The notes beneath the pieces were generated by a model. That model searched no databases, was not told the origin of the DNA, and saw nothing but the letters and a program-made list of their open reading frames with translations. DNA of 64,000 bases from Rebecca billardiae RCC1528 (lineage: Eukaryota; Protista; Haptophyta): assembly GCA_965240325.2 (NCBI GenBank), contig OZ251239.1, positions 1,364,001 to 1,428,000 of the forward strand. The letters are read 5' to 3'. Below, piece by piece: positions 23,070 to 59,732 of this stretch. Position 1 is the first letter of the stretch. Each line of letters opens with the position of its first letter. The position numbers and the translations under genes are program-made.

Positions 23070-23318
<249 letters not shown>

Positions 23319-26338: not shown

Positions 26339-27724
26339 TCATCGTCGCGACATCGCTGCTGGCTGTGGCTCGCGCACCCGCGCCTCGAGCTCGCGCAGGT
26401 ACTGCAGCGTGGCATGGTGCTCATCCTCAGAATCAGCTTGTGCCGCGGGACTGGAGCGTGCGCCAACGCGCAGCTGGGCGCCCGCGGGCTCGGCCTCGCC
26501 CTCCATGACCAAGCGCAGCACGCGCAGGTGCGACGGGTCGGCCGCCTGCTCGGCGAGACGCAGCCGCATGCGCGCGCGCACGAGCTCGGCGCGCATGCGC
26601 TCGGTGGCAGCGCGCTCGGCAGCGAGCGCGGCGGCAGCGTCGGCGTGCCGCGTGTCCACAGCGGGCTCCACCAGCCGGCCGAGCAGCGGAGCATCTGCAA
26701 CATGCTCCCCGCTGCCACTGCCGCCTGGCTCGTCAGCGGGCGGGGCAGTGCTTAGCGCGGGCTGTGTGTGCGCTGCATGCGCCCTGCTCGGCCCCGCGCG
26801 CTTGCCCGGCCCATCGCCGCGGCTGCGCGGGCCACTGCCACTCGCGACATCAGAGCAACGCGGAGGGCGAGCCTCGGCGCGAGCCGTGGCCCTCGGTGGC
26901 TGTGGGTGCGGCTGCGAGCCAGCGGCTGCGGCAGCAGCTGCGGTCGTGCTGTCGCCATTGCGCTGCACGCGCCTGCGCTTTGCGATGCCGCCCTGCTGAG
27001 GCTCAGGGGCTGCAGCACGCTTGCGCTCGCGCATGGCGCGCCCGCTGATCATGCCATCCAGCTTGTGCGTGGCGCAGCGACTGAGACGTTTGTCGCCCGG
27101 CATGCCAAAGGACGGCTGCTTATCACAGCCGGCATGCTCGCACCTGCGGCTGACCACGTTGACCATGCCGGCCAACTGGTGCGTGGCGCAGCGGCTGGCA
27201 CGTGTGTCGCCCGGCATGCCAAAGTGCGGCTGCTTGTCACAGCCGGCATGCTCGCACCTGCGGTGGCCCACGTCGACCATGCCGGCCAGCTTGTGCGTGG
27301 CGCAGCGGCTGGCACGTGTGCCGCCCGGCATGCCGAAGTGCGGCTGCTTGTCGCAGCCGGCATGCTCGCACCTGCGGCTCCTCACGTCGACCATGCCGGC
27401 CAGCTTGTGCGTGGCGCACCGGCTGGCCCATTTGCCGCCCGGCATGGCAAAAGACGGCCGCGTGTCACAGCCGGCATGCTCGCACCTGCGGCTAATCACG
27501 TCGACCATGCCGGCCAGCTTGTGCGTGGCGCAGAGGCTGGCACGTGTGCCGCCCGGCATGCCGAAGTACGGCACCTTGTCGCAGCCGGCATGCTCGCACC
27601 TGCGGCGCTTCACGTCGACCATGCCGGCTAGCTTGTGCGTGGCGCAGCGGCTGGGACGTGTGTCGCCCGGCTTGCCAAATGCCGGTTGCTTGTCACAGCC
27701 AGCTCGGCCGCACGTGCGGGGCAT
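26339..27724 (-). CDS. EsV-1-7-type Cys/His repeat protein, copy A (6 repeats)
   Basis: 38-aa C-x4-C-x16-C-x2-H repeats ([34 protein letters not shown]...), bipartite NLS and conserved C-terminal domain. ATG follows the family leader. Confidence 0.85.
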   Translation of the reverse strand: MPRTCGRAGCDKQPAFGKPGDTRPSRCATHKLAGMVDVKRRRCEHAGCDKVPYFGMPGGTRASLCATHKLAGMVDVISRRCEHAGCDTRPSFAMPGGKWASRCATHKLAGMVDVRSRRCEHAGCDKQPHFGMPGGTRASRCATHKLAGMVDVGHRRCEHAGCDKQPHFGMPGDTRASRCATHQLAGMVNVVSRRCEHAGCDKQPSFGMPGDKRLSRCATHKLDGMISGRAMRERKRAAAPEPQQGGIAKRRRVQRNGDSTTAAAAAAAGSQPHPQPPRATARAEARPPRCSDVASGSGPRSRGDGPGKRAGPSRAHAAHTQPALSTAPPADEPGGSGSGEHVADAPLLGRLVEPAVDTRHADAAAALAAERAATERMRAELVRARMRLRLAEQAADPSHLRVLRLVMEGEAEPAGAQLRVGARSSPAAQADSEDEHHATLQYLRELEARVREPQPAAMSRR

Positions 27725-28390
27725 CCTCGCGCGCGTCAGCCACGTAGCGTGTGCCGTGCTACTCGAAAGGGCAGTGAAGACTACCAAGGCGAGGCCGCCA
27801 TCGTGCCCCGTGTGCGAGTTGTCGGCGGAGGCTCGCTGCCAGCCGGCCTCGGCGGGACGAGGGCAGCCGCTCGAGCACGTGAGCACGGTCGGGAGTACGC
27901 CCCGCCACGCACGTGCGGTGTGGACGTCGCGTAGGATGAAGCCGTGGCGCATGGGCCGCTCGCGCCGGCTGCAGCGGAGAAGTGATGGCCGCTGCGCGAG
28001 GCCGCCCGTCGCAGACTCGCAGCGGTCGGCCAGCCCGGGACTGCCAGCCGTACCGATCGTGCGCTCGCCTGCCTGCCGCCACGTCTGGAGTCGCTGGAGG
28101 GTGTGCTTTCTGACGGTGATTGCGTTGGGCTCATCACGTGGCTGCTACACGCCCGTCATAGAGGGGAGACCTCGACGTTTAGACGGCGTCTGCTGAGACC
28201 AGTCCGCGCCTTGCCGCCATGGCGCACGTAAACATGCCTGGATGTGCAGCGTCCGGCGTCGTAGCTCCGCCCGTCCCGGTAGCTCGATCGACTGGCGAGC
28301 GGCGGCAACTTGACGCGCCGATAATAGCCCGGCGGCGGTCATCATCATGCGTATACGCATCAAAGCACGGCGTCTTCAGCACAACGACTA

Positions 28391-30112
28391 TCAACGCGAC
28401 GGCGCTGCTGACTGCTCACGCACCCTCGCCTCGAGCTCGCGCAGGTACTGCAGCGTGGCCTGGCGCTCGTCATCAGAAGCAGCTCGTGCCGCGGGACTGG
28501 AGCGTGCGCCTCCGGCCGGTGGTGCGCTCATGGGCTCGGTCTCGCCCTCCATGACCAAGCGCAGCACGCGCAGGTGCGACGGGTCGGCCGCCTGCTCGGC
28601 GAGACGCAGCCGCATGCGCGCGCGCACGAGCTCGGCGCGCATGCGCTCGGTGGCGGCGCGCTCGGCGGCGAGCTCGGCGGCATGGTCGGCGTGCTGCGTG
28701 ACCGCGGCGGGCTCGACTAGCCGGCCGAGCAGCGGGGCATCTGCCGCGTGCTCACCACTGCCACTGCCGCCTGGCCCGTCAGCGGGCGGTGCAGTGCTCA
28801 GGGCTGGCTGTGTGTGCGCTGCATGCGCCCTGCTTGGCCCCGCGCGCTTGCCCGGCCCATCGCCTTGGCTGTGCGGGCCGCCGCTGCTCGCGACAGCAGG
28901 GCGATGCAAAGGGCGAGCCTCCGCGCGAGCTGTGGCCCTCGGTGGCTGTGGACGCGGCTGCGAGCCGCCAGCAGCGGCAGCTGCTGCTGCCGTGCTGCCG
29001 CCATTGCGCTGCATGCGCCTTCGCTTTGCGCTGCCACCCTGCCGAGGCTCAGGGGCTGCAGCCCGCTTGCGCTCGCGCATGGCGCTCTTGCTGATCATGC
29101 CATCCAGCTTGTGCGTGGCGCAGCGACTGAGGCGTGTGTTGCCCGGCATGCCGAAGCACGGGTACTTGTCACAGCCAGCATGCTCGCACCTGCGGCTCTT
29201 CACGTCGACCATGCCGGCCAGCTTGTGCGTGCCGCAGCGGCTGGGGCGTGTGTCACCGGGCATGCCGAAGCACGGGTGCTTGTCACAGCCAGCATGCTCG
29301 CACCTGCGGCTCTTCAAATCGACCATGCCGGCCAGCTTGTGCGTGCCGCAGCGGCTGGGGCGTGTGCCGCCCGGCATGGCAAAGGACGGCTGCTTGAAAC
29401 AGCCGGCATGCTCGCACCTGCGGCTCTTCACGTCCACCATGCCGGCCAGCTTGTGCGTGCCGCAGCGGCTGGCTCGGGTGCCGCCCGGCATGGCAAAAGA
29501 CGGCCGCGTGTCACAGCCGGCATGCTCGCACCTGTGGCTGACCACGTTGACCATGCCGGCCAGCTTATGCGTGGCGCAGCGGCTGGCACGTGTGTCACCA
29601 GGCATGCCGAAGGACGGCACCTTGTCACAGCCGGCATGCTCGCACCTTTGGTGCTTCACATCGACCATGCCGGCCAGCTTGTGCGTGGCGCAGTGGCTGG
29701 CTCGGGTGCCGCCCGGCATGCCGAAGTACGGCTGCTTGTCACAGCCGGCATGCTCGCACCTGCGGCTCTGCACGTCGACCATGCCGGCCAGCTTGTGTGT
29801 GGCGCAGTGGCTGGCATGTGTTTCGCCCGGTATGCCAAAGTGCGGCCGCTTGTCGCAGCCGGCGTGCTCGCACCTGCGGCTCTTCAAATTGACCATGCCG
29901 GCCAGCTTGTGCGTGACGCAGCGGCTGGCACGCGTGTCACCCGGCATGCCAAAGTGCGGCTGCTTGTCACAGCCGGCATGCTCGCACCTGGGGTGCTTCA
30001 CGTCCACCATGCCGGCCAGCTTGTGTGTGGCGCAGCGGCTGGGACGCGCGGCACCCGGCTTGCCATATGCCGCCCGCTTGTCACAGCCAGCTCGACCGCA
30101 CGTCCGGGGCAT
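28391..30112 (-). CDS. EsV-1-7-type Cys/His repeat protein, copy B (9 repeats)
   Basis: Same architecture as copy A. Intact 573-aa ORF. Confidence 0.88.
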   Translation of the reverse strand: MPRTCGRAGCDKRAAYGKPGAARPSRCATHKLAGMVDVKHPRCEHAGCDKQPHFGMPGDTRASRCVTHKLAGMVNLKSRRCEHAGCDKRPHFGIPGETHASHCATHKLAGMVDVQSRRCEHAGCDKQPYFGMPGGTRASHCATHKLAGMVDVKHQRCEHAGCDKVPSFGMPGDTRASRCATHKLAGMVNVVSHRCEHAGCDTRPSFAMPGGTRASRCGTHKLAGMVDVKSRRCEHAGCFKQPSFAMPGGTRPSRCGTHKLAGMVDLKSRRCEHAGCDKHPCFGMPGDTRPSRCGTHKLAGMVDVKSRRCEHAGCDKYPCFGMPGNTRLSRCATHKLDGMISKSAMRERKRAAAPEPRQGGSAKRRRMQRNGGSTAAAAAAAGGSQPRPQPPRATARAEARPLHRPAVASSGGPHSQGDGPGKRAGPSRAHAAHTQPALSTAPPADGPGGSGSGEHAADAPLLGRLVEPAAVTQHADHAAELAAERAATERMRAELVRARMRLRLAEQAADPSHLRVLRLVMEGETEPMSAPPAGGARSSPAARAASDDERQATLQYLRELEARVREQSAAPSR

Positions 30113-30288
30113 CCTCGCGTGCGTCAGCCACGTAGCGTGTGCCGTGCTACTCGAAAGGGAAGTGAAGAACTGTGCCTAGCAGCTCGAGGGTGAGGCCGCC
30201 ATCGTGCGGCCGAGAGCCGCGTCAGCCGCCGAAAGTCCGGACGAAGTCGCCCGTCAGTGGCCGTCACGCGGCCATCGGGATCGTCACG

Positions 30289-31768: not shown

Positions 31769-31801
<33 letters not shown>

Positions 31802-33141: not shown

Positions 33142-33918
33142 GCAGTCATAGCCGACACCCCGGTCCGCCGGTGTCCCGTCCGGAGGGCGGAGCCGATCAG
33201 CGGACACACCTGGGCAGCCCGCGGCCCGGCCCGCGTCCGGACCGCCGCCGGCTGCGCCCGACGACCGTCGGATGCGACACCGTCATCGAAGGTGACACGA
33301 CCGTGAATTGCAAGGGTTGAGCCATCACGATGATTGACGATGATGGTGTAAAAGGCGGGCGCGATCGACAGACGGCAGTCAGTCGGCTGGCACTAGCCTA
33401 ACTGAGGCCTGCCGAGCGATGATGGCGCGGTCGACGAGTCGCTCCGGCATCGTCCGCCCAACGCAGCCGGGTGCTCAAAAAAGCTTTGGTCCGAGCACGA
33501 CAGGCCGCTGCCGATCAACCCCGTATGGGCGTGTTGGTGCGCCGAACGGCGTCCGCGCGCGCACGCGTGCGAGCGCAGCCCCTAGAGCCCCGACGTCGTC
33601 GGCCGCCATCGCGGTGGAAGGACAAAGTGACGACAGACAGGATGCCGGCGGCGTGCGCGAAAAGTCCGGCCGCGGCGGTGAATCAAGGCTGAACTTCAAG
33701 CTGGGGGGCCGGACGGCCCGCGTTGAGAAGGTCCTGGCGCCGCGCTTTGTATTTCGACGTGGACGCTCGCGCGAGATTCGCGCATCGGGGCGGCTGCACC
33801 CAACGTGCGCGGCCGCGTGATCGACGTCCGTATCAGTCGCGTGGCACTCGATTCATTCGCGTGTCGTCCGCCATCCGCCCGTGTCCACCCGTCGTCCGCC
33901 CACCCCCCACCCAACACC

Positions 33919-35508
<1,590 letters not shown>

Positions 35509-36015
35509 GCGCCGCGCTGGGCGGCCCCGCACGACGAACGACGGACGAAGGGCGGGGCGAGGCGAGGCGGGGCTGCGCCGGGCGACGCCGATGATCACCG
35601 CCACCACGACGACCCTCTCCTCCCACACCGATGCCGACGCGCGCCGCGGCCATCGGCCGCGCGCCGGGCCGCCGGGCTCCCGCGCCGCGCCCCGCCCCTT
35701 CAGTGCACGCATCGCATGCTGTTGATATCTGCTCCTCCTCTGTGCACCGCATGTCGTGTACTCAGCATCGCTGTGCTGTAGACTATCTCTCACTATTTCG
35801 GATCCTTACTGTCATCATGGCTCATCAGCCTTGTATAGACGCGACAGTAATGTCGTCGCGTCATCTCGCGGATCACTCGACGACAGGATCAGCGTCGTGT
35901 CGTGGCAAGCGCATTTTTTTCAAAAAAGGGGGGCTGAATGGCTGATGCCCCAGATATTCGCGATGAGCATCCGATCACGACGATGGCGGCATCGCGCGCG
36001 TAGCCCCCACGGCGC

Positions 36016-38085: not shown

Positions 38086-38977
38086 CGCACGCTGAGCACG
38101 CCACCGCTCTTGGTGCTGGCGTGCTGAGCCCACACACGCGCACTGCAGTGAGGCCACGATCGCCGTGCCTTCGTCGTCGGCGCCGGAATCCAGCCGCGCG
38201 CCGGCGCCAGTCTCTGTGGCCGCTGTGGCGGTGCACGAGTGTCTGAGCACTGTATACAGGCGTATAGCACAGCACGCCACCGCGCAGTTCCGCGCCAGTC
38301 GCGCCGCCGCCGTCACGCCGCGGCCGCGGCCTCCGATCCGTGCCCCTTATTAATACCTTATATTATAAATAACGGACAGTGCTCCGTCGGGTCGGCTCAG
38401 GCGGCGGCGGCTCCGCCGCCCCGGCTCGGATCCGTCGCCGTCGGCCTCGGGCAGCACTAGGCGCGCAGCATGAGTAGCCAGCATGAGCCGCGAGCCGGCG
38501 GCGGGCGACACGGTTCACATTCACGTCTGGATTCACGAATTAATGATTACTATCATGCGGGCGGTGATGAGGACGGTCATGTTCTGAAATTGCAGTGGAT
38601 GCCTCAGAGCGCGCGGTGACGGGCGACGAGAAGTGATGCGCTGTCTCACGACGAGACTATTACTCAGTCCGAGTCCAACGTTGACGAGCCGCGACACGGC
38701 CGCGGAGTCATTGAGCTCCGAGTCAGTCCGCGCCGTCCGCGGCCCGCGGGGACGGTGCATTCATTGGTCGATGCGCGAATCCCTCTTCCGCTACTAACAG
38801 TCTACTACTGTCTCATGACTTCGATGATGATGATGATGCCGCCGCTGCTGGTGCTGACGCGTCGCGGCCGCACCTGCGAGCTGCCGGCACGCTGGGGCTG
38901 GCATCTCCACACGCCGGCGCCAAGCCGCCATCGTGGGCCGTGGCCTTCATCAGTTCATGAATGAGCCACCCACGGCA

Positions 38978-39083
38978 GGCTCTCGGCCGCACGATGGCGG
39001 CCTCACCCTCGAGCTGCTAGGCACAGTTCTTCACTGCCCTTTCGAGTAGCACGGCACACGCTACGTGGCTGACGCACGCGAGG
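38978..39083 (+). promoter_or_regulatory. Conserved 5' leader of the EsV-1-7 family (also upstream of copies A, B, D and E)
   Basis: CCCTTTCGAGTAGCACGGCACACGCTACGTGGCTGACGC(G/A)CGCGAGG-ATG precedes all five ATGs with few substitutions. The 106 bp are nearly identical to the reverse complement of 30113-30218. Confidence 0.6.
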
Positions 39084-40505
39084 ATGCCCCCCACGTGCGG
39101 TCGAGCTGGCTGTGACAAGTATGCATCATATGGCAAGCCGGGTACACGTGCCAGCCGCTGCGGCACGCACAAGCTGGCCGGGATGGTGGACGTGCTGCAC
39201 CGCAGGTGCGAGCATGCCGGCTGTGACAAGCAGCCGCACTTTGGCATGCCGGGTGACACGCGTGCCAGCCGCTGCGTCACGCACAAGCTGGCCGGCATGG
39301 TCAATTTGAAGAGCCGCAGGTGCGAGCACGCCGGCTGCGACAAGCGGCCGCACTTTGGCATACCGGGTGACAAACGTGCCAGCCGCTGCGTCACGCACAA
39401 GCTGGCCGGCATGGTGAACGTGGTCAGCCGCAGGTGTGAGCATGCCGGCTGCGACAAGCGGCCGCACTTTGGCATACCGGGCGAAACACATGCCAGCCAC
39501 TGCGCCATGCACAAGCTGGCTGGCATGGTCGACGTGAAGAGCCGCAGGTGCGAGCATGCCGGCTGCGACAAGCATCCGCACTTCGGCATGCCTGGCGACA
39601 CACGTGCCAGCCGGTGCGCCACGCACAAGCTGGCCGGCATGGTCAACGTGAAGAGCCGCAGGTGCGAGCATGCCGGCTGTGACAAGCAGCCGTGCTTTGG
39701 CATGTCGGGTGACACGCGTCTCAGTCGCTGCGGTGCGCACAAGCTGGGTGGCATGATCTTCAAGCGCACCTGGTTTGAGCGCAAGCGTGCTGCAGCTCCT
39801 GAGCCTCAGCAGGGCGGCAGCGCAAAGCGAAGGCGTGTGCAGCGCAATGGCGGCAGCACGACCGCAGCTGCTGCCGCAGCCGCTGGCTCGCAGCCGCACC
39901 CACAGCCACCGAGGGCCACGGCTCGCGCCGAGGCTCGCCCTCCGCGTCGTCCTGATGTCGCGAGTGGCAGCGGCTCACGCAGCCGCGGCGATGGGCCGCG
40001 CAAGCGCGCGGGGCCGAGCAGAGCGCATGCAGCGCGTGCACACACAGCCCTAAGCGCTGCCCCGCCCGCTGACGGGCCAGGCGACGGTGGCAGCGGGGAG
40101 CATGCGGCAGATGCACCGCTGCTCGGCTGGCTGGTCGAGCCCGCCGCGTCCACGCAGCACACCGACGCTGCCGCCGAGCTCGCCGCCGAGCGCGCCGCCA
40201 CCGAGCGCATGCGCGCCGAGCTCGTGCGCGCGCGCATGCGGCTGCGTCTCGCCGAGCAGGCGGCCGACCCGTCGCACCTGCGCGTGCTGCGCTTGGTCAT
40301 GGAGGGCGAGGGCGAGCCTGTGGGCGGCCAGGAGCGCGTTGGCTCGCGCTCCAGTCCCGCGGCACGAGCTGAGTCTGATGACGAGCGCCATGCCACGCTG
40401 CAGTACCTGCGCGAGCTCGAGGCGCGGGTGCGCGAGCCCGCAGCAGCAGCAGGCCGTTGTATCGCGCACGCAATTGACTGGCGGCGTCGTACTGTAGTAT
40501 CTTAG
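39084..40505 (+). CDS. EsV-1-7-type Cys/His repeat protein, copy C (6 repeats)
   Basis: Same architecture. Intact 473-aa ORF. Confidence 0.88.
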   Translation: MPPTCGRAGCDKYASYGKPGTRASRCGTHKLAGMVDVLHRRCEHAGCDKQPHFGMPGDTRASRCVTHKLAGMVNLKSRRCEHAGCDKRPHFGIPGDKRASRCVTHKLAGMVNVVSRRCEHAGCDKRPHFGIPGETHASHCAMHKLAGMVDVKSRRCEHAGCDKHPHFGMPGDTRASRCATHKLAGMVNVKSRRCEHAGCDKQPCFGMSGDTRLSRCGAHKLGGMIFKRTWFERKRAAAPEPQQGGSAKRRRVQRNGGSTTAAAAAAAGSQPHPQPPRATARAEARPPRRPDVASGSGSRSRGDGPRKRAGPSRAHAARAHTALSAAPPADGPGDGGSGEHAADAPLLGWLVEPAASTQHTDAAAELAAERAATERMRAELVRARMRLRLAEQAADPSHLRVLRLVMEGEGEPVGGQERVGSRSSPAARAESDDERHATLQYLRELEARVREPAAAAGRCIAHAIDWRRRTVVS

Positions 40506-41376: not shown

Positions 41377-42759
41377 ATGCCCAGCACGTGCCGTCGAGTT
41401 GGCTGTGACAAGCAGCCGTCATTTGGCTATCCGGGTGCCGCGCCTCCCAGCCGCTGCGTCACGCACAAGCTGGCCGGCATGGTCGATTTGAAGAGCTGCA
41501 GGTGCGAGCACGCCGGCTGCATGCCCGGCGACACACGCCGCAGCCGCTGCGCCACGCACAAGCTAGCCGGCATGGTGGACGTGCAGCACCGCAGGTGCGA
41601 GCATGCCGGCTGTGTCAAGCAGCCGTACTTTGGCATGCCGGGCGACACACGTGCCAGCCGCTGCGGCACGCACAAGCTGGCCGGCATGGTCGACTTGCAC
41701 AGCCCCAGGTGTGGGCATGCCGGCTGTGACAAGCACCCGTGCTACGGCATGCCCGGCGACACACGCCGCAGCCGCTGCGCCACGCACAAGCTAGCCGGCA
41801 TGGTGGACGTGCAGCACCGCAGGTGCGAGCATGCCGGCTGTGTCAAGCAGCCGTACTTTGGCATGCCGGGCGACACACGTGCCAGCCGCTGCGGCACGCA
41901 CAAGCTGGCTGGCATGGTGGACGTGAAGAGCCGCAGGTGCGAGCATGCCGGCTGTGACAAGGTGCCGTCCTTTGGCAAGCCGGGTGACGCACGTCTCACC
42001 CGCTGCGCCGTGCACAAGCTGGCTGGCATGATCAATGTGCGCGCCTGGCGCGAGCGCAAGCGGGCTGCAGCCCCCGAGCCTCAGCAGGGCGGCAGCGCAA
42101 AGCGCCTGCGTGTGCAGCGCAATGGCGGCAGCACGACCGCAGCATCAGCTGCTGCTGCCAGCTCGCAGCCGCGTGCACAGCAACCGAGGGCCATGGCTCG
42201 CGCAGAGGCTCGCCCTTCGCGTCGCTCTGATGTCGCGAGTGGCAGCGGCCCGCGCAGCCCCGGCGATGGGCCGGGCAAGCGCGCTGGGCCAAGCAGGGCG
42301 CATGCAGCTCGCGCACAGCCAGCCCTGCGCACGGCTCCGCCTGCTGATGGGCCAGGCGGTGGAGGTGGCGGGGAGCATGCCGCAGATGCTCCGCTGCTCG
42401 GCCGGCTGGTCGAGCCCGCCGCAAGCACGCAGCACGCCGACGCTGCCGCCGAGCTCGCCGCCGAGCGTGCCGCCACCGAGCGCATGCGCGCCGAGCTCGT
42501 GCGCGCGCGCATGCGGCTGCGTCTCGCCGAGCAGGCGGCCGACCCGTCGCACCTGCGCGTGCTGCGCTTGGTCATGGAGGGCGAGGCCGAGCCTGTGGGC
42601 GGCCAGGAGCGCGTTGGCGCACGCTCTACTCCCGCGGCACGAGGTAATGAGCCTGATGACGAGCGCCAGGCCACGCTGCAGTACCTGCGCGAGCTCGAGG
42701 CGCGGGTGCGTGATCCTGCAGTGACGCCGCGCGACGATTCCGCGCGTGCTGGCAACTGA
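41377..42759 (+). CDS. EsV-1-7-type Cys/His repeat protein, copy D (6 repeats, repeat 2 with a 7-aa in-frame deletion)
   Basis: Same architecture. Repeats 2-3 and 4-5 form a duplicated pair. Confidence 0.85.
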   Translation: MPSTCRRVGCDKQPSFGYPGAAPPSRCVTHKLAGMVDLKSCRCEHAGCMPGDTRRSRCATHKLAGMVDVQHRRCEHAGCVKQPYFGMPGDTRASRCGTHKLAGMVDLHSPRCGHAGCDKHPCYGMPGDTRRSRCATHKLAGMVDVQHRRCEHAGCVKQPYFGMPGDTRASRCGTHKLAGMVDVKSRRCEHAGCDKVPSFGKPGDARLTRCAVHKLAGMINVRAWRERKRAAAPEPQQGGSAKRLRVQRNGGSTTAASAAAASSQPRAQQPRAMARAEARPSRRSDVASGSGPRSPGDGPGKRAGPSRAHAARAQPALRTAPPADGPGGGGGGEHAADAPLLGRLVEPAASTQHADAAAELAAERAATERMRAELVRARMRLRLAEQAADPSHLRVLRLVMEGEAEPVGGQERVGARSTPAARGNEPDDERQATLQYLRELEARVRDPAVTPRDDSARAGN

Positions 42760-42910
42760 CGATGTGTACGTGTCACGTCGTCGTACGAAGTCATGCATGT
42801 CACCGTCGTCTGTTACTGTCAGTCGGTTTGATCACAGTCAGTCACACGAAGCGTACCCTTGGTCACACCGTCGTCACCATCAATCATCCGGCATAGATCA
42901 TGGATGATGG

Positions 42911-44871: not shown

Positions 44872-44916
<45 letters not shown>

Positions 44917-46697: not shown

Positions 46698-46734
<37 letters not shown>

Positions 46735-47826: not shown

Positions 47827-47859
<33 letters not shown>

Positions 47860-48710
47860 GGGCGGCGGCGGCGGCGGCGGGCCGCACGCTCGAGGGCTGA
47901 CACTCGAGCTGGTCGAGCTGCAGCACGCGCCGAGGCGCATCTCGCGGCTGCTGCTCGACGCGGCGCACCGGCGCGGCCGCTCCGTCTCCTCGCTGCTCGT
48001 GCACTCGTGGCTCACGTCCTTTGGCGCGGGCGCGCCGCCGCACGGCGGCGGCGGCGGCGGCGGCGGCGCGGACGCGGGCGGCGGCGCGGACGCGAGCGTG
48101 GGCGGTCCGGCGGTGCGGGCGCAGCGCTCCTTCTCGCTGTCCAACGCGCTGGCGAGCGCGCTCTCCGGCGGCGGCGGCGGCTCGCCCGAGCGCCGGATGC
48201 CGCCGCGCACGCGCAGCTTCAGTGTGTCCACGCCGCGCGCGCGCGCGGGCGCGGGCGCGGGCGGCGGCGGCGCGCTCGGCGGCGGCGGCGCTGGCGGCGC
48301 GCGCGGCGGCGTGCGGCGCGCGCTGACGTGGGCGGCGGCGGCGCTGCGCGGCGGCGGCGGCGGCGGCGGCGGCCGCGCGCGCGCGCGCGCCGCCGCGCGC
48401 GCCGCCGCCGAGCAGCGCCGCCGCCAGTTCGCGCTGAGCATGCACGGCGCGGCCGCAGTTCTCCAGCTGCGCGCGCCCGGCGCGCGCGGCCGCGCCGCCG
48501 CCTCAGGGCCTGCCTCGGCCCAGTCTGACGACAGCGACGGCCTGCACACTCTGGTGGCGGCGCTGGCGCCGCAGCTCGCGGCGGTGGGCGTGAGCGTGGC
48601 CGAGGCGGGGCACGTGCCGCGGCGCGGGCTGTGGCTGCTGCTCGTGCACTACGCGCCGCCGCCGAGCACGGCACTCGCCCGGGGGGCGCTCGGCGCGGCC
48701 GCGGCGGCGC

Positions 48711-48753
<43 letters not shown>

Positions 48754-49349
48754 GGCCGGCGCGGCCGCGGACGCGGCGGCCATGCTGCACGCGCTGCGCG
48801 AGCGGCTGGAGGCGGCGCCGCTCTCGGCGGCGGCGGCGCAGACGTGCTCGCGCCTCGGGCTCGGCGGCGCGCGCCCGCCGCGCCCCGCCGCCGCCGCCCC
48901 CATCCCCGCAGCCATCGACACACCGCCCACGCTGCTCGGCGCGCTGCGCGCGACCGGTGCGCTCCGCGCCGCGCGGCCGCTGCACGCCGGGGCGCCGCTC
49001 AACGCGCTGCTGGGCGCGGGCAGCACGCCGATCCAGCGCTGGCTGGGGCGGCCGCCGAGCGCGGACGGCTGCGTGCTCGGCGGCATGCGCGCGTACGCCG
49101 GCCAGCGCGCGCCGCTCTGCCTCTGGGTGTGCGGCCGTGCGCTCGGCGCGCTCGCCTGGCCGTGCGCGGTTGCTGCGTGTCTAGACGGCGCGCGGCGCGC
49201 GCGCGCGGCCGCGCGCGCCGCGCGCGCCGCCGCGGCGCTCGGCGCGGCGGCGGGCGGCGAGGGGGCGGGGCCGGAGGGCGGCGTGGGCGCGGCGCTCGCG
49301 GCGTGGGCGCGCGCCGCCGCCGCTCTCCTCGGGGATGACGGCGGCGCGA

Positions 49350-49383
<34 letters not shown>

Positions 49384-50223
49384 TGGCGCGCGCGGAGGCG
49401 CGGCGGCCGCGGGCGGCGCGGCGCGCGGCGCGGCGCTCGGCGCGGCGGCGGGCGACCCGCCCGGCGCGCACGCGGCGGGCGCGGTGATGCTGCTCTGCGC
49501 GCTCCTCTACGGCGCCGCGCGCGCCGTGCTCAGCGCGGAGGCGGCGCGCGCGGCGCTCGCGCGCCGCGCGGCGCGCGAGCGGCGCGCGGCCGCGCGCGCC
49601 ACCGCCGGCGGCGCCTCCGCGGGGAGCGCGCCGCCGGTCGGCGCGGCCGAGGGCTCGCTGGCGTTCGGGCTGGCGTGGGCCGCGCTCGCGCTGCTGCTGA
49701 TCGGCGGCGCGGGCGGCGCCGCGTACGTCTTGCTCCGCGCGCACCTCCTCCTCGCGCGCGCGCTGGCGCTCGCGCCGCGGCTGAGCGCGCGCGCGAGCGC
49801 CGCGCGCGCCGCCGCGGCCGCGGGCGGCGCCGCGCTCGCGCCGACGAGCGCGGCGGGGGTGCGGCTGCAGCTGCTCGCGGCGCTGGCGCGGCTGGCGCGC
49901 CGCGGCGTGCGCGGGCTCGGCGTCGCCGCGTGCCGCGCCGCCGAGCTCACCACCTTCGCCGCCGCCACCGCCGCGCTCGGCGGCGCGAGCGCGCGCGCCG
50001 CGCGCGCCGCGTGCACCGCGCTCGCCGCCGCGGAGGCGCGCGCGGCCGGGCTCGTCTCGCGCTCGGCGTGCGACGAGGAGGAGCGCGCGCTGGGCGACGG
50101 GCGGTACCTGCTCGTGCGCGCGGGCGCGGTGCTCGCCGTCGCCCTCTGCGCGCCGCTCCACGCGCTGTGCTCGGGCGGCGGCGGTGCCGCCGCGCTCGGC
50201 GCCGCGCCGCCGGCCGGCGGCGC

Positions 50224-50259
<36 letters not shown>

Positions 50260-52408
50260 GGTGGGCGCCGAGCGGCGGCGGCTGGGCGCGGAGCTGAGCG
50301 CGCTCTTCGCGGCGCACTGCCTGAGCGCGCTCCTCTCGATGGTGAGCGCGCGCGTCGCCAGCGGCGCGGGCGCCGGCTCGGGCGCCGCCGCCGCGCGCTC
50401 GCGCGTCGTCTGTGCCGCCGACATGAAAGACGGCGGAGGCGGCGGCGGCGGAGCGATGCGGCGGAGCGGGTGCGCGTCGGCGGACGCGGACGCGGCGGCG
50501 GAGGCCGCGGCGGCGGCCGAGCTCACCACCACGCTCGCCTTCGCCTTCGCCGAGACCTCCGCCCCCGCGCACGACGCCTCGGCCGCCGCGGCAGACTGCG
50601 CGTGTCTCTGGGCGCTGGGCGGTTGCTTCGTGGCGCACAGGCCTGCGCTCGCGCTCGCCGCGGCGGTGGCGTCGCTCGTGCGGCTGCGGGCGGACTGGCT
50701 GCAGACGCTGCTGCTCTCGCGGCGCGGCTGGCCCGCCGGCGCGGGCGTGCTGCGCGCGCGCGGCGCGGACGCGGCGGACGGCGGCGGCGGCGGCGCGGGC
50801 GCGGCGGCGGCGCGCGAGCGCGCGCAGAGTGTAGGCGCGCCGCCGCCCGCGCCGCTCGGCGCGGCGGGCGAGGCGGAGGAGCGCTGGCTCGACGCGCGGC
50901 TGGGCAGCGCGGACGGCGCGGCGCGCGCGCACATCGCGCTGCTGCGTGCGCTCGGCGTGCTCGCCGTCGTCACCAACGCCGCGCTGCTGCTCCCCGCGGG
51001 GGCGGCGCGCGGCGCGGGCGGCGCGGGCGGCCGCGGCGGCGGCGCGCCGTCGGCCGGCGCGGGCGCGGCAGCAGCGCCGCCGCAGCCCGACGCCGCGTGC
51101 GAGCTCGCCGCCGCCGCCGCGACCACGCGCGCCGCGCTGCTGCTGGCCGCCGCGAGCGTCGGCGTCCTCGTCCTCTGCGGGCCACTCACGCAGCCGCCGC
51201 CGCCCGCGGGCGCGGCGGCGGGTTGGGCGGAGGGCGAGGCGGAGGAGGCCGACGAGGCTGAGAGGTGCACGCTGCTGGGCGCGCACCACGGCTGCTCCGC
51301 CGCGGCGGCGGGCGAGGTGAGCGCCCGGGCCCTCGCCGCGGAGGAGGCGCGGCAGTGGCTCTTCGGCAGCGGCGCGCCGCCGCAGAGCGCGCTCGCCATG
51401 CGCCGCGCGGCCGTGCGAGTGCTGCTGACTCCGTCGCTCGGCGCGCTCGGCGCGGCGGCGGACGGCGCGCACGCCGCGGCGCGCGGCGCGGCGGCGCACG
51501 TCACGCCGTTCGCCGCGCTCACGCTGCTCACCGTCGGCGCGGCGTGGGTCGCGGGCGCGCACGGCATGCACTTTGGCGTCGGCCTCTCGCTCGCCGCGCT
51601 GCTGCACGAGGCGCAGCGCGTGCGCGCGCGACAGGTGGCGTTGCGCGCGCACGCGGCGGCCACGCGCGAGGCGGACGCGCTGCGGGCGTTCGCGCGCGCG
51701 CACGCCGCGCCGCCGGCGCTGCTGTCCGCCGCCGACGCGAAGGCGGCCGCCGCGGCGGCGGGCGCGGCCGCGGCGCACGCCGCGGCGACGCGCGCCTTGG
51801 CGGAGGCGGCGAGCGGCGCCGCGGGCGCGCGCGACGGCGGCGGCGGCGGGTACGCGCCCGGCGGCGCGCCGAGCGGCCTGGGCGGCTCCGGCTGCGGCGG
51901 CAGCAGCTCGGCCGTCGTGCGCAAGGGGCCGAGCACCGGCTCCATCGCCGCGGCCAAGGCGGCCGCCTCCGCGGCGAAGGTGGCGACGGCGGTGGGCGCG
52001 CGCGCGGCGGCGGCGAGCGGCGCGGGCGCCGCGCGCGCCGCCACGGCACTGGACGGCCCGTGGCTGGGCGGCGAGCCGAGCGCGCCGCCGGCGAGGCCCA
52101 GCAGGGCGGCGTGCGCCGGCGGCGGCGCGGGCAGCAGCAGCGCGGCGAGCAACCGCCGGCGCTCCTTCTCCTCCGGGGACGTGCTGAGCGGCGCGGACGA
52201 GGCCGCCGCAGCCGCCACCGACGTGGCCAGCGCTCTGTCTGCCGCTGTCGCGAGCGCCGCGGCCGCCGCCGCCAGCTGCGCCGCGGCGGGCGGCTCGCTG
52301 CCGTCCACGCCCAAGCAGGGCGAGCGGCTGCTGCAGGTGCGGCTGAACGCGCCCCTCTCGACGCCGCCCACGCCCGACCCCGGCACGCCCACGCGCCACG
52401 CCGCTGCG

Positions 52409-52445
<37 letters not shown>

Positions 52446-52891
52446 AGCACGGCGGCGCGAGCCGGCGCGGCGGCGGGGCCGCGGCCGCGAGCGCGGCGGC
52501 CGCGCCGCCGCCGCCGCCGCCGATGACGACGACGGCGACGACGACGACAGCGGGCTCGTGCGGCGGCGGCGGGGTCGGCGGCGGCGCGGCGCCCGCCGCG
52601 CACGCCTCGCGCCGCTCCAGCCCGCCGCGCGAGCACCCCTCCGCCGCGGACGCGCCGCCGGCGGCCATTCTGTGCGCGGAGGGGGAGGCGGAGGCTGAGG
52701 GTGCGCAGCCCCCGCTGGATGCGGCGTGGGCGCACGTCGCGTGGCTGAGCGCGCTCGTGCGCACCATGTGGCCGGTGATCGCCGCGGACGTGTCGGAGCG
52801 GCTGCAGGAGGAGATCCAGGACGCGATCGAGAAGGCCATCCAGGCGGACGCGGAGGGCAAGGGCGTGGGCGCCGACAAGGGCGGAGGCGGA

Positions 52892-52926
<35 letters not shown>

Positions 52927-55151
52927 AGGTGGCGGCGGCGGTGGGAGTGGCGTCGATGGTGGCGGCGGCGGGGCCGGCGGCGGCGGGGGCAGCGGCCCGG
53001 CCACCGCGCCGCCCTCCTCCTCCTCGGGCCAGCCGACGATGCGCAACTTCAAGACGCGGCTCAACCTGGGCACGCACCCGCCTGCGTTCGAAGCGGTGCG
53101 GCTAGCCACGCCCTCGGCGGCGCTGCGCGGCGTGCCGCACGCGTTCTGCGCGGAGGCGCGCGTGCACTGGGCGTCCGACGCGTCGCTGGTGGTGACCGCC
53201 GACGTGGGCCGCCGCCTCCTCTCCTTCTCCGTCTCCTTCGCGCTGCGCTCGATCGCGCTGCGCGGCGTGCTGCGTGTCGAAGGCGTTCCGCGACCCGCGC
53301 CGCCCTACCTCGGGAGGCTTCGACTTTCCTTCCAGGAGAGCCCGCACGTGATCTTCGAGCTCAAGGCGCTGGACACGCTGGACATCATGGAGTTCCCGTT
53401 CCTCGAGCGGTACATCTCCACCTTCTTCCGGCAGAACCTCTTCGCCGAGATCACCGCGCCCAACGCCGCCGAGTTTGAGCTGCACGAGGTGAGCCGCACC
53501 GCACCGCACCGCACCGCACAGCACCGCACAGCACCGCACAGCACAGCACAGCACAGCGCACAGCGCACAGCGCAGCACAGCACAGCGCAGCGCACAGCGC
53601 TGAGTGCCGAGCGTTCCGCACCGCGTCAGTGGCCCCCGCCCGCCCGCCTGAGCCCCCGCGCGCGCTCCCGCCCCGCGCTGGCCCGCGCGCCCCCCTCGCA
53701 CGCCCCCGCAGGTCATCGGCGCCGCCCAGCCGCACCTGCTCACGCTGCACCTGCGCTCAGCCGCACCACAGTGGCTCGCGGCCGCGGCCGACGGCACGGG
53801 CGTGGGCGCGCGCCGCACGCTGCGGCTGGTGGCGTCGCTCTCCGAGGTGGCGTACAAGGTGCACGAGGCCACGACGGAGGGCGTGCTCTGGACAGCGCCC
53901 GCCAGCGGGGGCGGCGGCGGCGCGTCGTCCGAGCCCGGCGGCGCGTCCGCGCCGCCGCCCGTCTCGTGGGAGGAGTGGGTGACGATGCCGGTGGTCGAAC
54001 CGGAGCGCACGCAGCTTGTGCTCAGCCTACAGGCGAGGGACGAGGTGGGCGGGTATGCGCAGCTGGCGAGCGCGACGCTGCCGCTGATCGGCGGGGACAA
54101 GCGGCGCGGCGGCGGCGGTGGAGGCGGCGGCGGCGGTGGCAGCGGCGGCGGCGGCGCGGCCAAGGCGGCCGCGAGCGGCGCCGCGGCGGCGCGCGCGGCC
54201 GCGGCGCTGAGCGCGGGCGCGGCCGCCGCCGCCGCCGCAGCCGCCGCAGCCGCGGACGCGGCCGCCGCGGCGCGCGCGCTCTGGGGCCCGCCGCTGCTGC
54301 CGGACGCGCGCGTGCTGCTGCCCTCGCCGAGCGGGGAGCGGATGCGCTCGGTGCGCGTCTTCATGCGGCCGACGCAGCCGACGCCCGCGGCCGCCGCCAC
54401 CGCCGCCGCGGCCGCGGCCGCGGCGGCCGCCGCGGCCGGCGGCGCCGCCGCCCTCTCCGCCGCGGCCGCGGCCGCGCCGCCGCCGCCGGACCAGCCAGGC
54501 TGGTGGCTCAGCCTCGGCGTGCAGATGTCGCGCCCGCCCGCGCCCGCGACCGCGGCTTTGCGCGCGCTCGGCCCTCTGCAGCTGCACGTCGGTGGGCTGC
54601 AGCTGCACGGCGTAAGTCCGGGCTCTCTGCTCTGCCTGGAGGTGCGGCTGGGAGGGAGGCGCGCGCCGACGCGCGCGATCACCGCGTCCGAGGCGGAGCG
54701 CTGCGTGTGGCGCGACTTCAGCGCGACGCTCGACGCGCGCAAGCCGCACGCGCAGCGGCTCACCGTCGCGCTGCTCGCGCCGCGCACCGCGCGCGCGCCG
54801 CCGCGCGGCACCGTGGGAGCCGCCGCGGCGCTCGGCGCGTCGCCGCCCGCCGGCTCGCCCGCCGGTCGCGCGGGCGGCGGCGCCGCCGCGCCGGGCGCCG
54901 AGGGCGCCGAGCTCGGCACGGCCACGCTCGACCTGCGCGAGCTCGGCGTGGGCGCCACCGAGGTGCGATGGCTGCCGATCCGGCTCGCGGACTCGGCGGA
55001 GGATGAGCCGGGCGGCGCGGCCGCGGTCGTGCGCGCCGAGCTGACGCTCTTCAAGCCGGGCGCGGCCGGGGGCGGCGCGGGCGGCGGCGCGGGTGGCGGC
55101 ACGGGCGGCGCGGGTGGCGGTGACCACCAGGCCGCGGGTGGCGCCGGCTGA
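44723..55151 (+). CDS. ~3350-aa fusion: 2x CRAL-TRIO/Sec14, degenerate anoctamin/TMEM16-like region, SMP domain, C2-like domains; 3 exons
   Basis: Introns 45499-45642 and 53489-53711 are phase-consistent. Sec14 motifs: AWRREHGIDELL, GTDRNATPL, HYPAMLARVLVVNAP, CLPRALGG. SMP motifs: WLSALVRTMWP, LNLGTHPPAF, LSFQESP, DIMEFPFL. C2-like beta-strand segments lie in exon 3. Confidence 0.8.
53495..53600 (+). repeat. Intronic pentanucleotide repeat (GCACC/GCACA)n
   Basis: Seen directly within intron 53489-53711. Confidence 0.85.
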
Positions 55152-55507
55152 GGAAGCCGCCCCGCCCTGCTGACAATCATCATGGCCGCGCGAGCTAGAG
55201 TTGCACTACGACGGACTGCGACTACGCGATATGAGCGACGATGTTTAGCGATGCTGCGACGCAGCATGACTCGACGATACATCATGCTTGGCGGAGCGTA
55301 CTCTCGACGGTGCTCCCGACCGTGGTCTCCCGCTCGAGCGGCTGCCTGGTGGGCCCTGAGGCCAGCCCGACCCATCGGCGGGACGGCGGCCATCGTCAAT
55401 CGTCATCGTCGTCATTTTCCGTTTTTGCGTCATCATCATCGCAATTTATTTCAACGGAGTCCCTTTCGAGTAGCACGGCATACACTGCGTGGCTGACGCG
55501 CGCGAGG

Positions 55508-56695
55508 ATGCCCAGCATGTGCGGCCGAGCTGGCTGTGACAAGCGCGCGATATATGGCAAGCCGGGTACACGTGCCAGCCTCTGCGCTGCTCACAAGCTG
55601 GCCGGCATGGTGGACGTGAAGAGCCGCAGGTGCGAGCATGCCGGCTGTGACAAGCAGCCGTACTTTGGCATGCCGGGCGACACACGTGCCAGCCGCTGCG
55701 CCACACACAAGCTGGCCGGCATGGTGAACGTGAAGAACCGCAGGTGCGAGCATGCCGGCTGCCACAAACAGCCGTACTTTGGCATGCCGGGCGACACACG
55801 TGCCAGCCACTGCGCCACACACAAGCTGGCCGGCATGGTGGACGTGAAGAACCGAAGGTGCGAGCATGCCGGCTGTGACAAGCATCCTAACTATGGCACG
55901 CCGGGTGACACATGTCTCCGTCGCTGCGCTGTGCACAAGCTGGGTGGCATGATCAGCATGCGCGCCATGCGCGAGCGCAAGCGGGCTGCAGCCCCTGAGC
56001 CTCAGCAGGGCGGCAGCGCAAAGCGCAGGCGCGTGCAGCGGAACGGTGGCGGCACGGCTGCAGCAGCTGCCGCTGCTGCCAGCTCGCAGCCGCAGCCGCA
56101 GCCACCGAGGGCCACGGGTCGCGCTGAGGCTCACCCACCGCGTCGCCCCGCTGTCGCGAGCGGCAGCGGCCCGCGCAGCCGCGGCGATGGGCCGGGCAAG
56201 CGCGCGGGGCCGAGCAGGGCGCATGCAGCGCATACACAGCCCGCCCTGGGCACTGCCCCGCCTGCTGATGGGCCAGGCGGTGGAGGTGGCGGGGAGCATG
56301 CGGCAGATGCCCCGCTGCTCGGCCGGCTGGTCGAGCCCGCCGCGTCCACGCAGCACACCGACGCTGCTGCCGAGCTCGCCGCCGAGCGCGCCGCCACCGA
56401 GCGCATGCGCGCCGAGCTCGTGCGCGCGCGCATGCGGCTGCGTCTCGCCGAGCAGGCGGCCGACCCGTCGCACCTGCGCGTGCTGCGCTTGGTCATGGAG
56501 GGCGAGGCCGAGCCCGCGGGCGCCCAGCCGCGCGTTGGCGCACGCTCCAGTCCCGCGGCACAAGCTGATTCTGAGGACGAGCGCCATGCCACGCTGCAGT
56601 ACCTGCGCGAGCTCGAGGCGCGGGTGCGCGAGCCAGCAGGCGAGCAGCGACGTCGCGCGACGGCGTCGTCCGATTATTCCGCCGGCCGCGCGTGA
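55508..56695 (+). CDS. EsV-1-7-type Cys/His repeat protein, copy E (4 repeats)
   Basis: Same architecture and family leader. Confidence 0.85.

Positions 56696-56745: not shown

Positions 56746-57145
<400 letters not shown>

Positions 57146-59325: not shown

Positions 59326-59732
<407 letters not shown>

What the first reader, a model, noticed from the sequence alone, without database searches (positions are those of the whole stretch)
26339..56695. Expanded family of nuclear 'variable Zn-repeat array + constant effector' genes built from EsV-1-7 repeats (KRAB-ZFP/TALE-like logic)
Seen: five intact intronless genes in 30 kb with 6, 9, 6, 6 and 4 tandem 38-aa (114-nt) C-x4-C-x16-C-x2-H repeats. 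The scaffold (CEHAGC, PG, HKLAGM) is nearly fixed. Variation is strongest just after Cys2 (DKQPAF, DKVPYF, DTRPSF, DKRPHF, FKQPSF, DKHPCF, VKQPYF, DKHPNY, DKYASY, DKRAIY) and in the linker (DVKRRR, DVISRR, DVGHRR, NVVSRR, NLKSRR, DVQHRR, DLHSPR, NVKNRR). Each array has distinct first and last cap repeats, then RKR-x12-KR(R/L)R, then a constant C-terminal domain. Established: this repeat type matches the EsV-1-7 motif of giant algal viruses and algae (for example Ectocarpus IMM), and KR-x10-12-KRRR is a classical bipartite NLS. Inference: these are modular nucleic-acid or protein recognisers with reprogrammable specificity feeding one effector, possibly for TE or virus surveillance.
Basis: partly seen in the sequence, partly recalled or inferred. 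Interest (0 to 1): 0.9.

Follow-up and report, generated by a model that had tools for sequence, protein, structure and literature searches.

The report
Algal zinc-repeat genes with orphan tail
Five neighbouring genes of a very GC-rich haptophyte alga encode strings of a known but functionally unsolved zinc-type repeat (EsV-1-7) joined to a tail found nowhere else. In giant viruses the same strings are fused to a DNA-cutting-type domain, so the repeats probably bind nucleic acid, but no recognition code, effector or expression has been shown.

Summary
Five intact intronless paralogs carry 6, 9, 6, 5+1 truncated and 4 units of the Pfam EsV_1_7_cys repeat (E 1e-53 to 1e-123). Each has first and last cap units, a bipartite-NLS-like motif and a shared tail of about 240 aa.

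The "constant effector" is not supported:
- The tail has no relative in 1.84 billion proteins, metagenome contigs or viral contigs.
- It is predicted as about 110 disordered residues plus a helical hairpin.

The "reprogrammable code" is not shown:
- The scaffold is under purifying selection (pN 0.046, pS 0.21).
- The three hypervariable codons (9, 11, 35) vary no more than the top 3 of 38 neutral codons would (simulation P = 0.46).

Added here:
- The arrays align from Met1 (MPPxC) at 50% identity with giant-virus proteins.
- In 47 of 51 viral loci such arrays are fused to a Vsr-like PD-(D/E)xK fold (Z 8.9).
- The algal genes therefore look like nuclease-less versions with an orphan tail.
- The arrays are strongly basic (+24 per 231 aa).
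- The copied DNA unit is the gene only.
- GC3 (0.72-0.85) is below that of neighbouring genes (0.91-0.98).
- No expression data could be obtained.

The scan has already reported this family on other DNA of the same genome (96 notes hold the word "EsV"; the 8 shown were all followed up). Verdict: a new variant of a known kind, of moderate interest.

The parts
26339..27724 (-). g1, probable CDS from the shared ATG: array of 6 units (27029-27724) plus tail (26339-27028). The ORF extends to 27952, but that part is not conserved.
28391..30112 (-). g2: array of 9 units (29075-30112) plus tail (28391-29074)
39084..40505 (+). g3: array of 6 units (39084-39776) plus tail (39777-40505). This is the reference copy for the AlphaFold2 model.
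41377..42759 (+). g4, probable CDS from the shared ATG: 5 intact units and 1 truncated unit (41377-42051) plus tail (42052-42759)
55508..56695 (+). g5, probable CDS from the shared ATG: array of 4 units (55508-55972) plus tail (55973-56695)
41503..41937 (+). Recent tandem duplication of a two-unit block inside g4. The central 165 nt or so are identical, and the first copy carries a 21-nt in-frame deletion.
39777..39839 (+). Bipartite-NLS-like motif (RKR, 12 residues, KRRR) at the start of the g3 tail. It is invariant in all five copies except one R-to-L change in g4.
   Evidence: read directly from the sequence
39816..40148 (+). Predicted disordered Ala/Gly/Arg/Pro-rich linker of g3 (residues about 245-355, pLDDT under 50). 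It is nevertheless under purifying selection.
40149..40448 (+). Helical part of the g3 tail (predicted helices 358-407 and 425-450). Two stretches, 45 and 15 residues long, are invariant in all five copies.
38975..39083 (+). Shared 5' leader of g3. Homology between paralogs starts about 60-110 nt upstream of the ATG, and 40 of the last 47 nt are invariant in all five copies.

Best explanation
These are five paralogs of a lineage-specific subfamily of EsV-1-7 repeat proteins in a pavlovophyte haptophyte.

Anatomy:
- Each protein starts at Met1 with an array of 4-9 basic 38-residue C-x4-C-x16-C-x2-H modules, presumed to bind one zinc each.
- A distinct first and last cap unit bracket the array.
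- After the array come a bipartite-NLS-like motif, about 110 disordered residues and a helical hairpin or coiled coil of about 100 residues.

Origin: the array is homologous, from the first residue on, to the array of giant-virus proteins. In those proteins it is almost always fused to a Vsr-like PD-(D/E)xK nuclease fold. The algal genes are nuclease-less versions in which an orphan tail takes the place of the nuclease.

Most likely mechanism (inferred, not shown): the protein enters the nucleus, the basic zinc-module array binds nucleic acid (DNA more likely than RNA), and the shared helical tail lets paralogs form homo- or hetero-oligomers. Binding preference would differ between paralogs because unit number, unit order and a few surface residues differ. 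Unit duplication and exchange between paralogs generate that diversity. Nothing shows an enzymatic or repressor 'effector'.
For: Family and reality:
- Pfam E-values down to 4e-123.
- The four ligand positions never vary in the window's 31 units or in 148 units of 27 other proteins.

The genes look functional:
- All five ORFs are intact.
- Scaffold codons have pN 0.046 against pS 0.217, and many sites show significant purifying selection.
- The tail has dN/dS 0.28-0.61, variable columns by codon position of 34/38/70, and indels only in multiples of 3.

Nucleic-acid binding:
- The array has net charge +24 over 231 aa.
- A giant-virus MAG protein aligns from its MPPKC to g3's MPPTC at 50% identity over 227 aa.
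- About 70 of 101 database relatives carry a C-terminal RPD...ExDExxH domain.
- The model of that domain (pLDDT 90.9) matches Vsr endonuclease at Z 8.9, followed by Hjc, Mus81, McrC, DdmD and Can2.
- In 47 of 51 viral loci with this domain, two or more EsV units lie in frame upstream, usually 8.

Tail:
- The AlphaFold2 array is confident (pLDDT 85-95). Residues 245-355 are disordered, and helices span 358-407 and 425-450.
- The NLS-like motif is invariant.

Diversity mechanism:
- Unit identity is 0.872 both within and between genes. One unit is 100% identical between g2 and g3.
- g4 contains a recent two-unit duplication.
Against: - No expression evidence. The only public run that holds any of the sequence gave fragments of 56-273 nt at 90-99% likeness, and its library kind is unknown.
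- No binding data exist for any EsV-1-7 protein in the papers I could search.
- The array fold has no solved counterpart, so DNA contact cannot be modelled here.
- The nuclease argument is guilt by association, and the Z of 8.9 is only just above the tool's stated noise level of 7-8.
- PD-(D/E)xK folds include RNA endonucleases, and these appear among the Foldseek hits.
- The helical part of the tail shows weak constraint overall (dN/dS 0.42-0.94) with low dS, so gene conversion could explain its near-invariance.
- GC3 below that of neighbouring genes would fit low expression.
Confidence: 0.5

Rival explanations
1. RNA-binding proteins. The Cys3His modules bind RNA, as many CCCH fingers do, and the family acts after transcription or on viral RNA.
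For: - The ligand set is CCCH and the modules are very basic.
- Foldseek hits for the viral partner domain include cap-snatching RNA endonucleases of arenaviruses and bunyaviruses.
Against: - The spacing C-x4-C-x16-C-x2-H differs from the TIS11-type C-x8-C-x5-C-x3-H (established knowledge).
- The best structural match of the partner domain is Vsr, a DNA mismatch endonuclease. Most other hits are DNA nucleases.
- The NLS-like motif points to the nucleus.
Confidence: 0.15
2. Protein-protein interaction scaffolds. The zinc modules are adaptor surfaces, like LIM or B-box arrays, that assemble regulatory complexes, as might be the case for Ectocarpus IMM. No nucleic acid is read.
For: - The only genetically studied member, IMM, is a developmental regulator of unknown biochemical function.
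- Weak shape resemblance to LIM, PZP and the EHMT2 Cys-rich region.
- Variable surface residues evolve at a neutral-like rate.
Against: - The strong positive charge of every unit.
- The near-obligate fusion to a nuclease-like fold in viruses.
- The fold matches are all non-significant (E above 0.8).
Confidence: 0.15
3. Host shield or decoy. Nuclease-free arrays occupy the DNA sites that giant-virus array-nucleases would cut, or poison them by mixed assembly. This would be an antiviral or anti-selfish-gene function and is a special case of the DNA-binding reading.
For: - Same start, same caps and 50% identity with the viral array-nuclease proteins, but without the nuclease.
- A family expanded in many clusters in this genome.
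- GC3 lies between viral (0.37) and host (0.91-0.98) values.
Against: - Pure inference. No virus of this alga is in hand, and no target is known.
- Positive selection, which an arms race would predict, is not shown.
Confidence: 0.08
4. Decaying remnants of a viral insertion or of a selfish gene-sized mobile cassette, with no present host function.
For: - The genes are intronless, while the neighbouring SAHH gene has an intron.
- The copied unit is the gene only, from about -110 nt to the stop codon, with no shared flanks.
- GC3 is lower than in host genes.
- One unit in g4 is truncated.
- No expression evidence.
Against: - Five of five ORFs are intact and 1.2-1.7 kb long.
- Purifying selection acts on the scaffold and tail, and indels keep the frame.
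- The neighbours are ordinary host genes, not viral genes.
- No TE hallmarks were found at the unit ends.
Confidence: 0.08

Closest known systems
EsV-1-7 domain family (Pfam PF19114; Ectocarpus IMMEDIATE UPRIGHT and its roughly 100 paralogs; brown-algal tandem clusters)
   Same: - The same repeat, matched far above Pfam's threshold.
- Repeated units, and expansion in tandem or neighbouring gene clusters, as described for brown algae.
- No other Pfam domain in the protein, as in Ectocarpus.
- Suspected viral link.
   Different: - The host is a pavlovophyte haptophyte, not a brown alga or raphidophyte. The papers I could search describe no expansion outside the brown-alga/raphidophyte lineage. 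The Diacronema genome paper mentions no zinc or virus family.
- The units are far more uniform, and the arrays start at residue 1.
- The C-terminal tail is unique. IMM instead has a unique N-terminal domain.
Giant-virus (Nucleocytoviricota MAG) EsV-1-7 array plus Vsr-like PD-(D/E)xK domain proteins, e.g. L001 2965-4896
   Same: - Array 50% identical from the initiator MPPxC.
- The same first cap (KYAS motif) and last cap (GMI motif), and variable unit number.
- The nearest shape neighbours in the ESM Atlas are viral EsV-1-7 clusters.
   Different: - The algal proteins lack the two extra Cys motifs and the RPD...ExDExxH domain.
- Their tail is unrelated to that domain (hhalign probability 0.1%).
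- The viral gene has GC3 0.37, against 0.72-0.85 here.
KRAB zinc-finger proteins and TALE effectors (functional analogy only)
   Same: - Tandem modules with a fixed scaffold and a few variable positions.
- Arrays that differ between paralogs, joined to a constant non-array part.
- Unit gain and loss by unequal recombination.
   Different: - The fold and ligand pattern are unrelated.
- There is no KRAB-like or activation domain.
- No positive selection is shown at the variable positions.
- No one-unit-per-base rule is known.
Zf_WRKY19 (PF24906) and NFX1-type zinc-finger repeats
   Same: - Sub-threshold Pfam matches to Zf_WRKY19 in g1-g3 (16-25 bits against a cut-off of 27).
- Both families appear as distant shape neighbours in the ESM Atlas.
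   Different: The scores are below the curated cut-off and the TM-scores are only 0.17. I do not claim membership.

Membership tests
EsV-1-7 cysteine-rich repeat family (PF19114) | Match to the Pfam model above the gathering score (25 bits) | tested here: met
   177-401 bits, with 4-9 stretches per protein
EsV-1-7 cysteine-rich repeat family (PF19114) | Invariant Cys/Cys/Cys/His ligands with spacing C-x4-C-x16-C-x2-H, in tandem units | tested here: met
   28 of 31 units have exactly this spacing. Two first caps have x15, and the truncated g4 unit has x9. All four ligand positions have zero entropy.
EsV-1-7 cysteine-rich repeat family (PF19114) | Zinc binding by each unit | not testable with these tools
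Giant-virus EsV-1-7 array-nuclease proteins | N-terminal array with MPPxC start and KYAS-type first cap and GMI-type last cap | tested here: met
   BLASTP alignment from residue 1, 50% identity over 227 aa; sequences
Giant-virus EsV-1-7 array-nuclease proteins | C-terminal domain of about 175 aa with RPD...ExDExxH and a Vsr-like PD-(D/E)xK fold | tested here: not met
   The tail is unrelated (hhalign probability 0.1%), the motif is absent, and the tail is predicted as disorder plus helices.
KRAB-ZFP-like 'array plus effector' system | A recognisable effector or cofactor-recruiting domain attached to the array | tested here: not met
   No Pfam or PHROG family, no homolog in 1.84e9 proteins, and only generic helical-hairpin matches with Z 6.3 or lower.
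KRAB-ZFP-like 'array plus effector' system | Diversifying selection at specificity-determining positions | tested here: inconclusive
   - pN at positions 9, 11 and 35 is 0.44, against pS 0.21.
- That equals the top 3 of 38 neutral codons in simulation (P = 0.46).
- The site LRTs are not significant.
- The same positions tend to vary in independent arrays (rho 0.37, p = 0.02).
TALE-like modular code | One repeat reads one base through defined variable residues | not testable with these tools
   Needs binding data or a complex structure.
Classical bipartite NLS | Two basic clusters, KR then 10-12 residues then at least 3 of 5 K/R | tested here: met
   RKR, 12 residues, then KRRR(V) in four copies and KRLR in g4. 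Nuclear import itself was not tested.
TIS11/CCCH RNA-binding zinc finger | C-x8-C-x5-C-x3-H spacing | tested here: not met
   The spacing here is x4, x16, x2, and there is no Pfam zf-CCCH match.

The most novel reading that the evidence does not exclude
EsV-1-7 arrays are a natural modular DNA-reading device. Each zinc unit would contact a short DNA step through the residues after Cys2 and in the linker. Giant viruses would use the device to aim a Vsr-like nuclease, as a natural 'zinc-module nuclease'. This alga would have copied the aiming part, without the nuclease, into many nuclear proteins. These would act as regulators or as shields for the viral target sites, and would diversify by unit shuffling.
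Probability: 0.15. Interest if true: 0.85.

Novelty: new variant of a known kind. Interest (0 to 1): 0.5.

Why it matters
The EsV-1-7 repeat marks one of the largest gene families of brown algae and includes a developmental regulator. Yet no paper I could search says what the repeat binds.

This window adds three things:
- The family is also expanded in a distant lineage, a pavlovophyte haptophyte.
- One subfamily carries an orphan tail of nuclear-import motif, disorder and helices.
- The algal arrays correspond from the first residue on to the arrays of giant-virus proteins that are nearly always fused to a nuclease-like fold.

This turns "unknown cysteine-rich motif" into a testable claim that the arrays aim at nucleic acid. 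It also offers short natural arrays (4, 6 and 9 units) with known differences for binding tests. If a unit-by-unit rule exists, it would be a new kind of programmable binder. If not, this is an ordinary lineage-specific expansion of a viral-type zinc-repeat gene.

Tried and rejected
1. Transposon or LTR cargo: rejected. Homology between copies runs only from about 60-110 nt upstream of the ATG to the stop codon, with no shared flanks or terminal repeats. The 278-nt perfect direct repeats downstream of g4 belong to a separate element.

2. Location inside an integrated giant-virus region: rejected. The neighbours are host-type genes with GC3 0.91-0.98, including an intron-bearing adenosylhomocysteinase 87% identical to that of Pavlovales sp. 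CCMP2436.

3. Tail as a degenerate nuclease domain: rejected (hhalign probability 0.1%).

4. Tail as a known domain: no result from any of these.
- Pfam and PHROGs.
- Profile search of 1.84e9 proteins.
- ESM Atlas features, best score 0.71.
- Metagenome and viral contig scans.
- Earlier-findings look-up by sequence.

5. Solved structure of the array: none found by sequence, Foldseek or VIA wide search.

6. Expression: a single run of unknown kind gave only short fragments. This is uninformative either way.

7. Site-wise codon LRTs (my own FEL-like script).
- Optimisation ran away at two invariant-residue sites (1 and 32).
- There were inconsistencies at site 11.
- I use the results only as qualitative support for purifying selection.

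8. Other calls that gave nothing.
- Exact-sequence look-up of the proteins: not in the collection.
- Macaisne et al. 2017: not held in the library.
- One search was an empty script, and one search failed because of a regex slip that I corrected.

9. Geometry of the array model (zinc-site distances, superhelix pitch, exposure of the variable residues): not possible, because model coordinates are not exposed to scripts.
Full report
**1. What is there**

The window is very GC-rich, 0.53-0.87 per 2 kb. It comes from a pavlovophyte haptophyte. An adenosylhomocysteinase exon at 34483-35508 is 87% identical to that of Pavlovales sp. CCMP2436. The composition also fits the 73% GC reported for Diacronema lutheri (PMC8379373).

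Each matches Pfam PF19114 (EsV_1_7_cys) with E between 4e-53 and 4e-123, in 6, 9, 6, 6 and 4 stretches. A unit HMM built from the window finds 31 units, all inside these genes and all on the stated strand. One unit of g4 (41503-41595) lacks 7 residues.

The long antisense ORFs across the arrays are by-products of GC-rich repeats. Only the sense frame matches Pfam, and only it shows synonymous excess.

**2. Gene models**

Homology between paralogs begins 60-110 nt upstream of a shared ATG and ends at about the stop codon. The 47 nt before that ATG are invariant at 40 positions in all five copies. g2 and g3 start at this ATG (MPxTCG...). The longer N-termini of the g1, g4 and g5 ORFs are not conserved and are probably not coding.

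The proteins therefore have this order:
- array from residue 1;
- last cap unit;
- RKR-x12-KR(R/L)R;
- tail.

No copy has an intron, whereas the neighbouring adenosylhomocysteinase gene is split.

**3. Selection**

Among the 20 internal units the ligand positions 1, 6, 23 and 26 and most scaffold positions never change. The highest entropies are at positions 35, 11 and 9, then 24, 17, 36 and 7.

Nei-Gojobori counts:

| Codon set | Value |
|---|---|
| pS, all codons | 0.211 |
| pN, 30 scaffold codons | 0.046 |
| pN, five moderately variable codons | 0.225 |
| pN, codons 9, 11 and 35 | 0.443 |

The last figure looks like diversifying selection, but those codons were picked because they vary. I simulated all 38 codons as neutral on the unit tree, with pS matched to the data. 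The three most variable codons then reach a mean pN of 0.454 (95th percentile 0.518). The observed value is 0.456, P = 0.46.

Site-wise likelihood tests show purifying selection at many scaffold sites. No site has a significant excess of non-synonymous change (a home-made script with numerical problems at two sites).

In 27 independent proteins (148 units), positions 9, 11, 35, 36 and 7 are again among the eight most variable (Spearman 0.37, p = 0.02). The positional pattern is therefore a property of the fold. The scaffold is clearly constrained.

**4. How the arrays change**

- Internal units are as similar between genes as within genes, 0.872 in both cases.
- Cap units group by position.
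- One unit is identical at all 114 nt between g2 and g3.
- The g3 leader is 97.6% identical to that of g2, while its tail is closest to g1.
- g4 holds a two-unit tandem duplication with about 165 identical central nucleotides and clustered differences at its edge.

Unit duplication and exchange between paralogs, rather than point mutation alone, generate the different arrays.

**5. The tail is not an identifiable effector**

The five tails are 82-85% identical. Searches for relatives found nothing:
- A profile of the tails found no protein at E 0.001 or better among 1.84 billion representatives.
- Scans of metagenome and viral contigs found none.
- Pfam, PHROGs and ESM Atlas features gave nothing.
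- All 101 database relatives of g3 align only to the array, covering at most 49% of the query.

AlphaFold2 gives this picture:
- the array is confident, pLDDT 85-95;
- residues 245-355 are disordered, pLDDT under 50;
- helices span 358-407 and 425-450, pLDDT 64-84.

The helices match only generic helical hairpins, Z 6.3 or lower, below the tool's noise level for helices.

The tail is nevertheless coding and constrained:
- variable columns number 34, 38 and 70 at codon positions 1, 2 and 3 (chi-square about 16 by my arithmetic);
- indels are multiples of three;
- dN/dS is 0.28-0.61 overall.

The disordered part is the better constrained, at dN/dS 0.20-0.48. The helical part has low dS (0.05-0.15) and dN/dS 0.42-0.94. 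Its near-invariance may therefore owe something to gene conversion. My reading of the tail is nuclear import signal, flexible linker and oligomerisation helices. That reading is inference.

**6. Relatives and the nuclease link**

Earlier notes of this scan on other clusters of the same genome say that viral relatives join such arrays to a DNA-cutting domain. I tested this.

- A giant-virus MAG locus lies next to a D5-type primase-helicase. It encodes 11 units followed by a 174-residue domain.
- The viral protein aligns with g3 from MPPKC/MPPTC at 50% identity over 227 residues, with the same KYAS-type first cap and GMI-type last cap.
- About 70 of the 101 relatives carry the same C-terminal domain. 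Its invariant residues are D, E, D, E and H, in RPD...ExDExxH.
- Sequence methods barely see the domain. One member each hits DUF2726 and REase_MTES_1575, and there is no PDB hit.
- Its model is confident, pLDDT 90.9.
- Foldseek's list is almost entirely PD-(D/E)xK nucleases, though with E of 0.03 or worse.
- VIA-align gives Z 8.9 to Vsr endonuclease. Next come two mitoribosomal chains, VC1899 and Cdn1 (Z 7.7-6.4), then mostly PD-(D/E)xK nucleases such as Bax1, PspGI, McrC, Can2, DdmD, Hjc and Mus81.
- In 51 viral loci found with this domain, 47 have two or more EsV units in frame upstream, most often 8 and up to 16. The exceptions are a frameshifted copy, a copy cut by a contig end and two partial matches.

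The array is thus the near-obligate partner of a nuclease-like fold in giant viruses. Together with the charge of +24 per 231 residues, this is the best available argument that the array binds nucleic acid. It remains guilt by association.

**7. Origin**

| Sequence | GC3 |
|---|---|
| Neighbouring host genes | 0.91-0.98 |
| Arrays | 0.78-0.85 |
| Tails | 0.72-0.78 |
| Viral relative | 0.37 |

The following features fit a viral-type gene that entered the host and was amplified, although low expression would also lower GC3:
- no introns;
- gene-sized copy units;
- intermediate GC3;
- nearest shape neighbours that are Nucleocytoviricota clusters.

The neighbourhood itself is host DNA, not an integrated virus.

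**8. What is known**

- The EsV-1-7 family is described as hugely expanded, and often in tandem arrays, in brown algae.
- One genetically defined member is known (IMM). [quoted passage not shown]
- Biochemical function is unknown, and a viral link is suspected.
- In the searchable literature I found no mention of a haptophyte expansion, of the array-nuclease architecture or of this tail.
- Within this scan the family has been reported many times on other DNA of the same genome. There are 96 notes with the word 'EsV', and the 8 shown were all followed up with similar conclusions. At least two other subfamilies are noted with an 'NLS/acidic tail'.

**9. Verdict**

'Variable zinc-repeat array plus constant tail, probably nuclear and nucleic-acid binding' stands. 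'Effector', 'reprogrammable specificity' and 'surveillance' are not supported by anything I could test. Expression is untested because no usable run exists. This is a new variant of a known kind, of moderate interest.

Noticed in passing
window 42907-43184 and 44232-44509: Two 278-nt direct repeats, 100% identical and 1325 nt apart, lie just downstream of g4. They enclose a 64-68-nt minisatellite of 5 copies (43246-43586) that contains short GC-rich palindromes. The arrangement looks like a small LTR-like or terminally redundant element and is not shared with the other four genes.
   Followed up: partly
window 33805-35508 (+): Adenosylhomocysteinase gene split by an intron of roughly 80 nt (about 34400-34480). 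GC3 is 0.985, and the protein is 87% identical to that of Pavlovales sp. CCMP2436. It is useful as a taxonomic marker for the window.
   Followed up: partly
window 45710-55006 (+): A single open frame of 3098 codons at 0.82-0.87 GC with long Ala/Gly runs. Another note of the scan reads it as a Sec14/SMP/C2 lipid-transfer protein. I did not examine it.
   Followed up: no
window 5424-5460 and 299-330: Short interstitial telomere-like repeats (CCCTAA-type variants) far from any visible chromosome end.
   Followed up: no
window 56748-57145, 23072-23312, 59328-59734: Long AT-rich compound microsatellites ((TA)n, (TC)n, TATG/TACA-type) form sharp low-GC islands next to g5 and upstream of g1. They flank the gene cluster region.
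   Followed up: no
L002 1-1237 (giant-virus MAG contig): A second copy of the viral array-nuclease gene in the same MAG has its array and its nuclease-like domain in different frames. This is either a frameshifted copy or an assembly error.
   Followed up: no
window 39064-39075 and the same place in the other four leaders: An invariant 12-nt block containing ACGTGG and TGACG cores lies 9-20 nt upstream of the shared ATG in all five genes. It may be a common cis element or only part of the copied unit.
   Followed up: no
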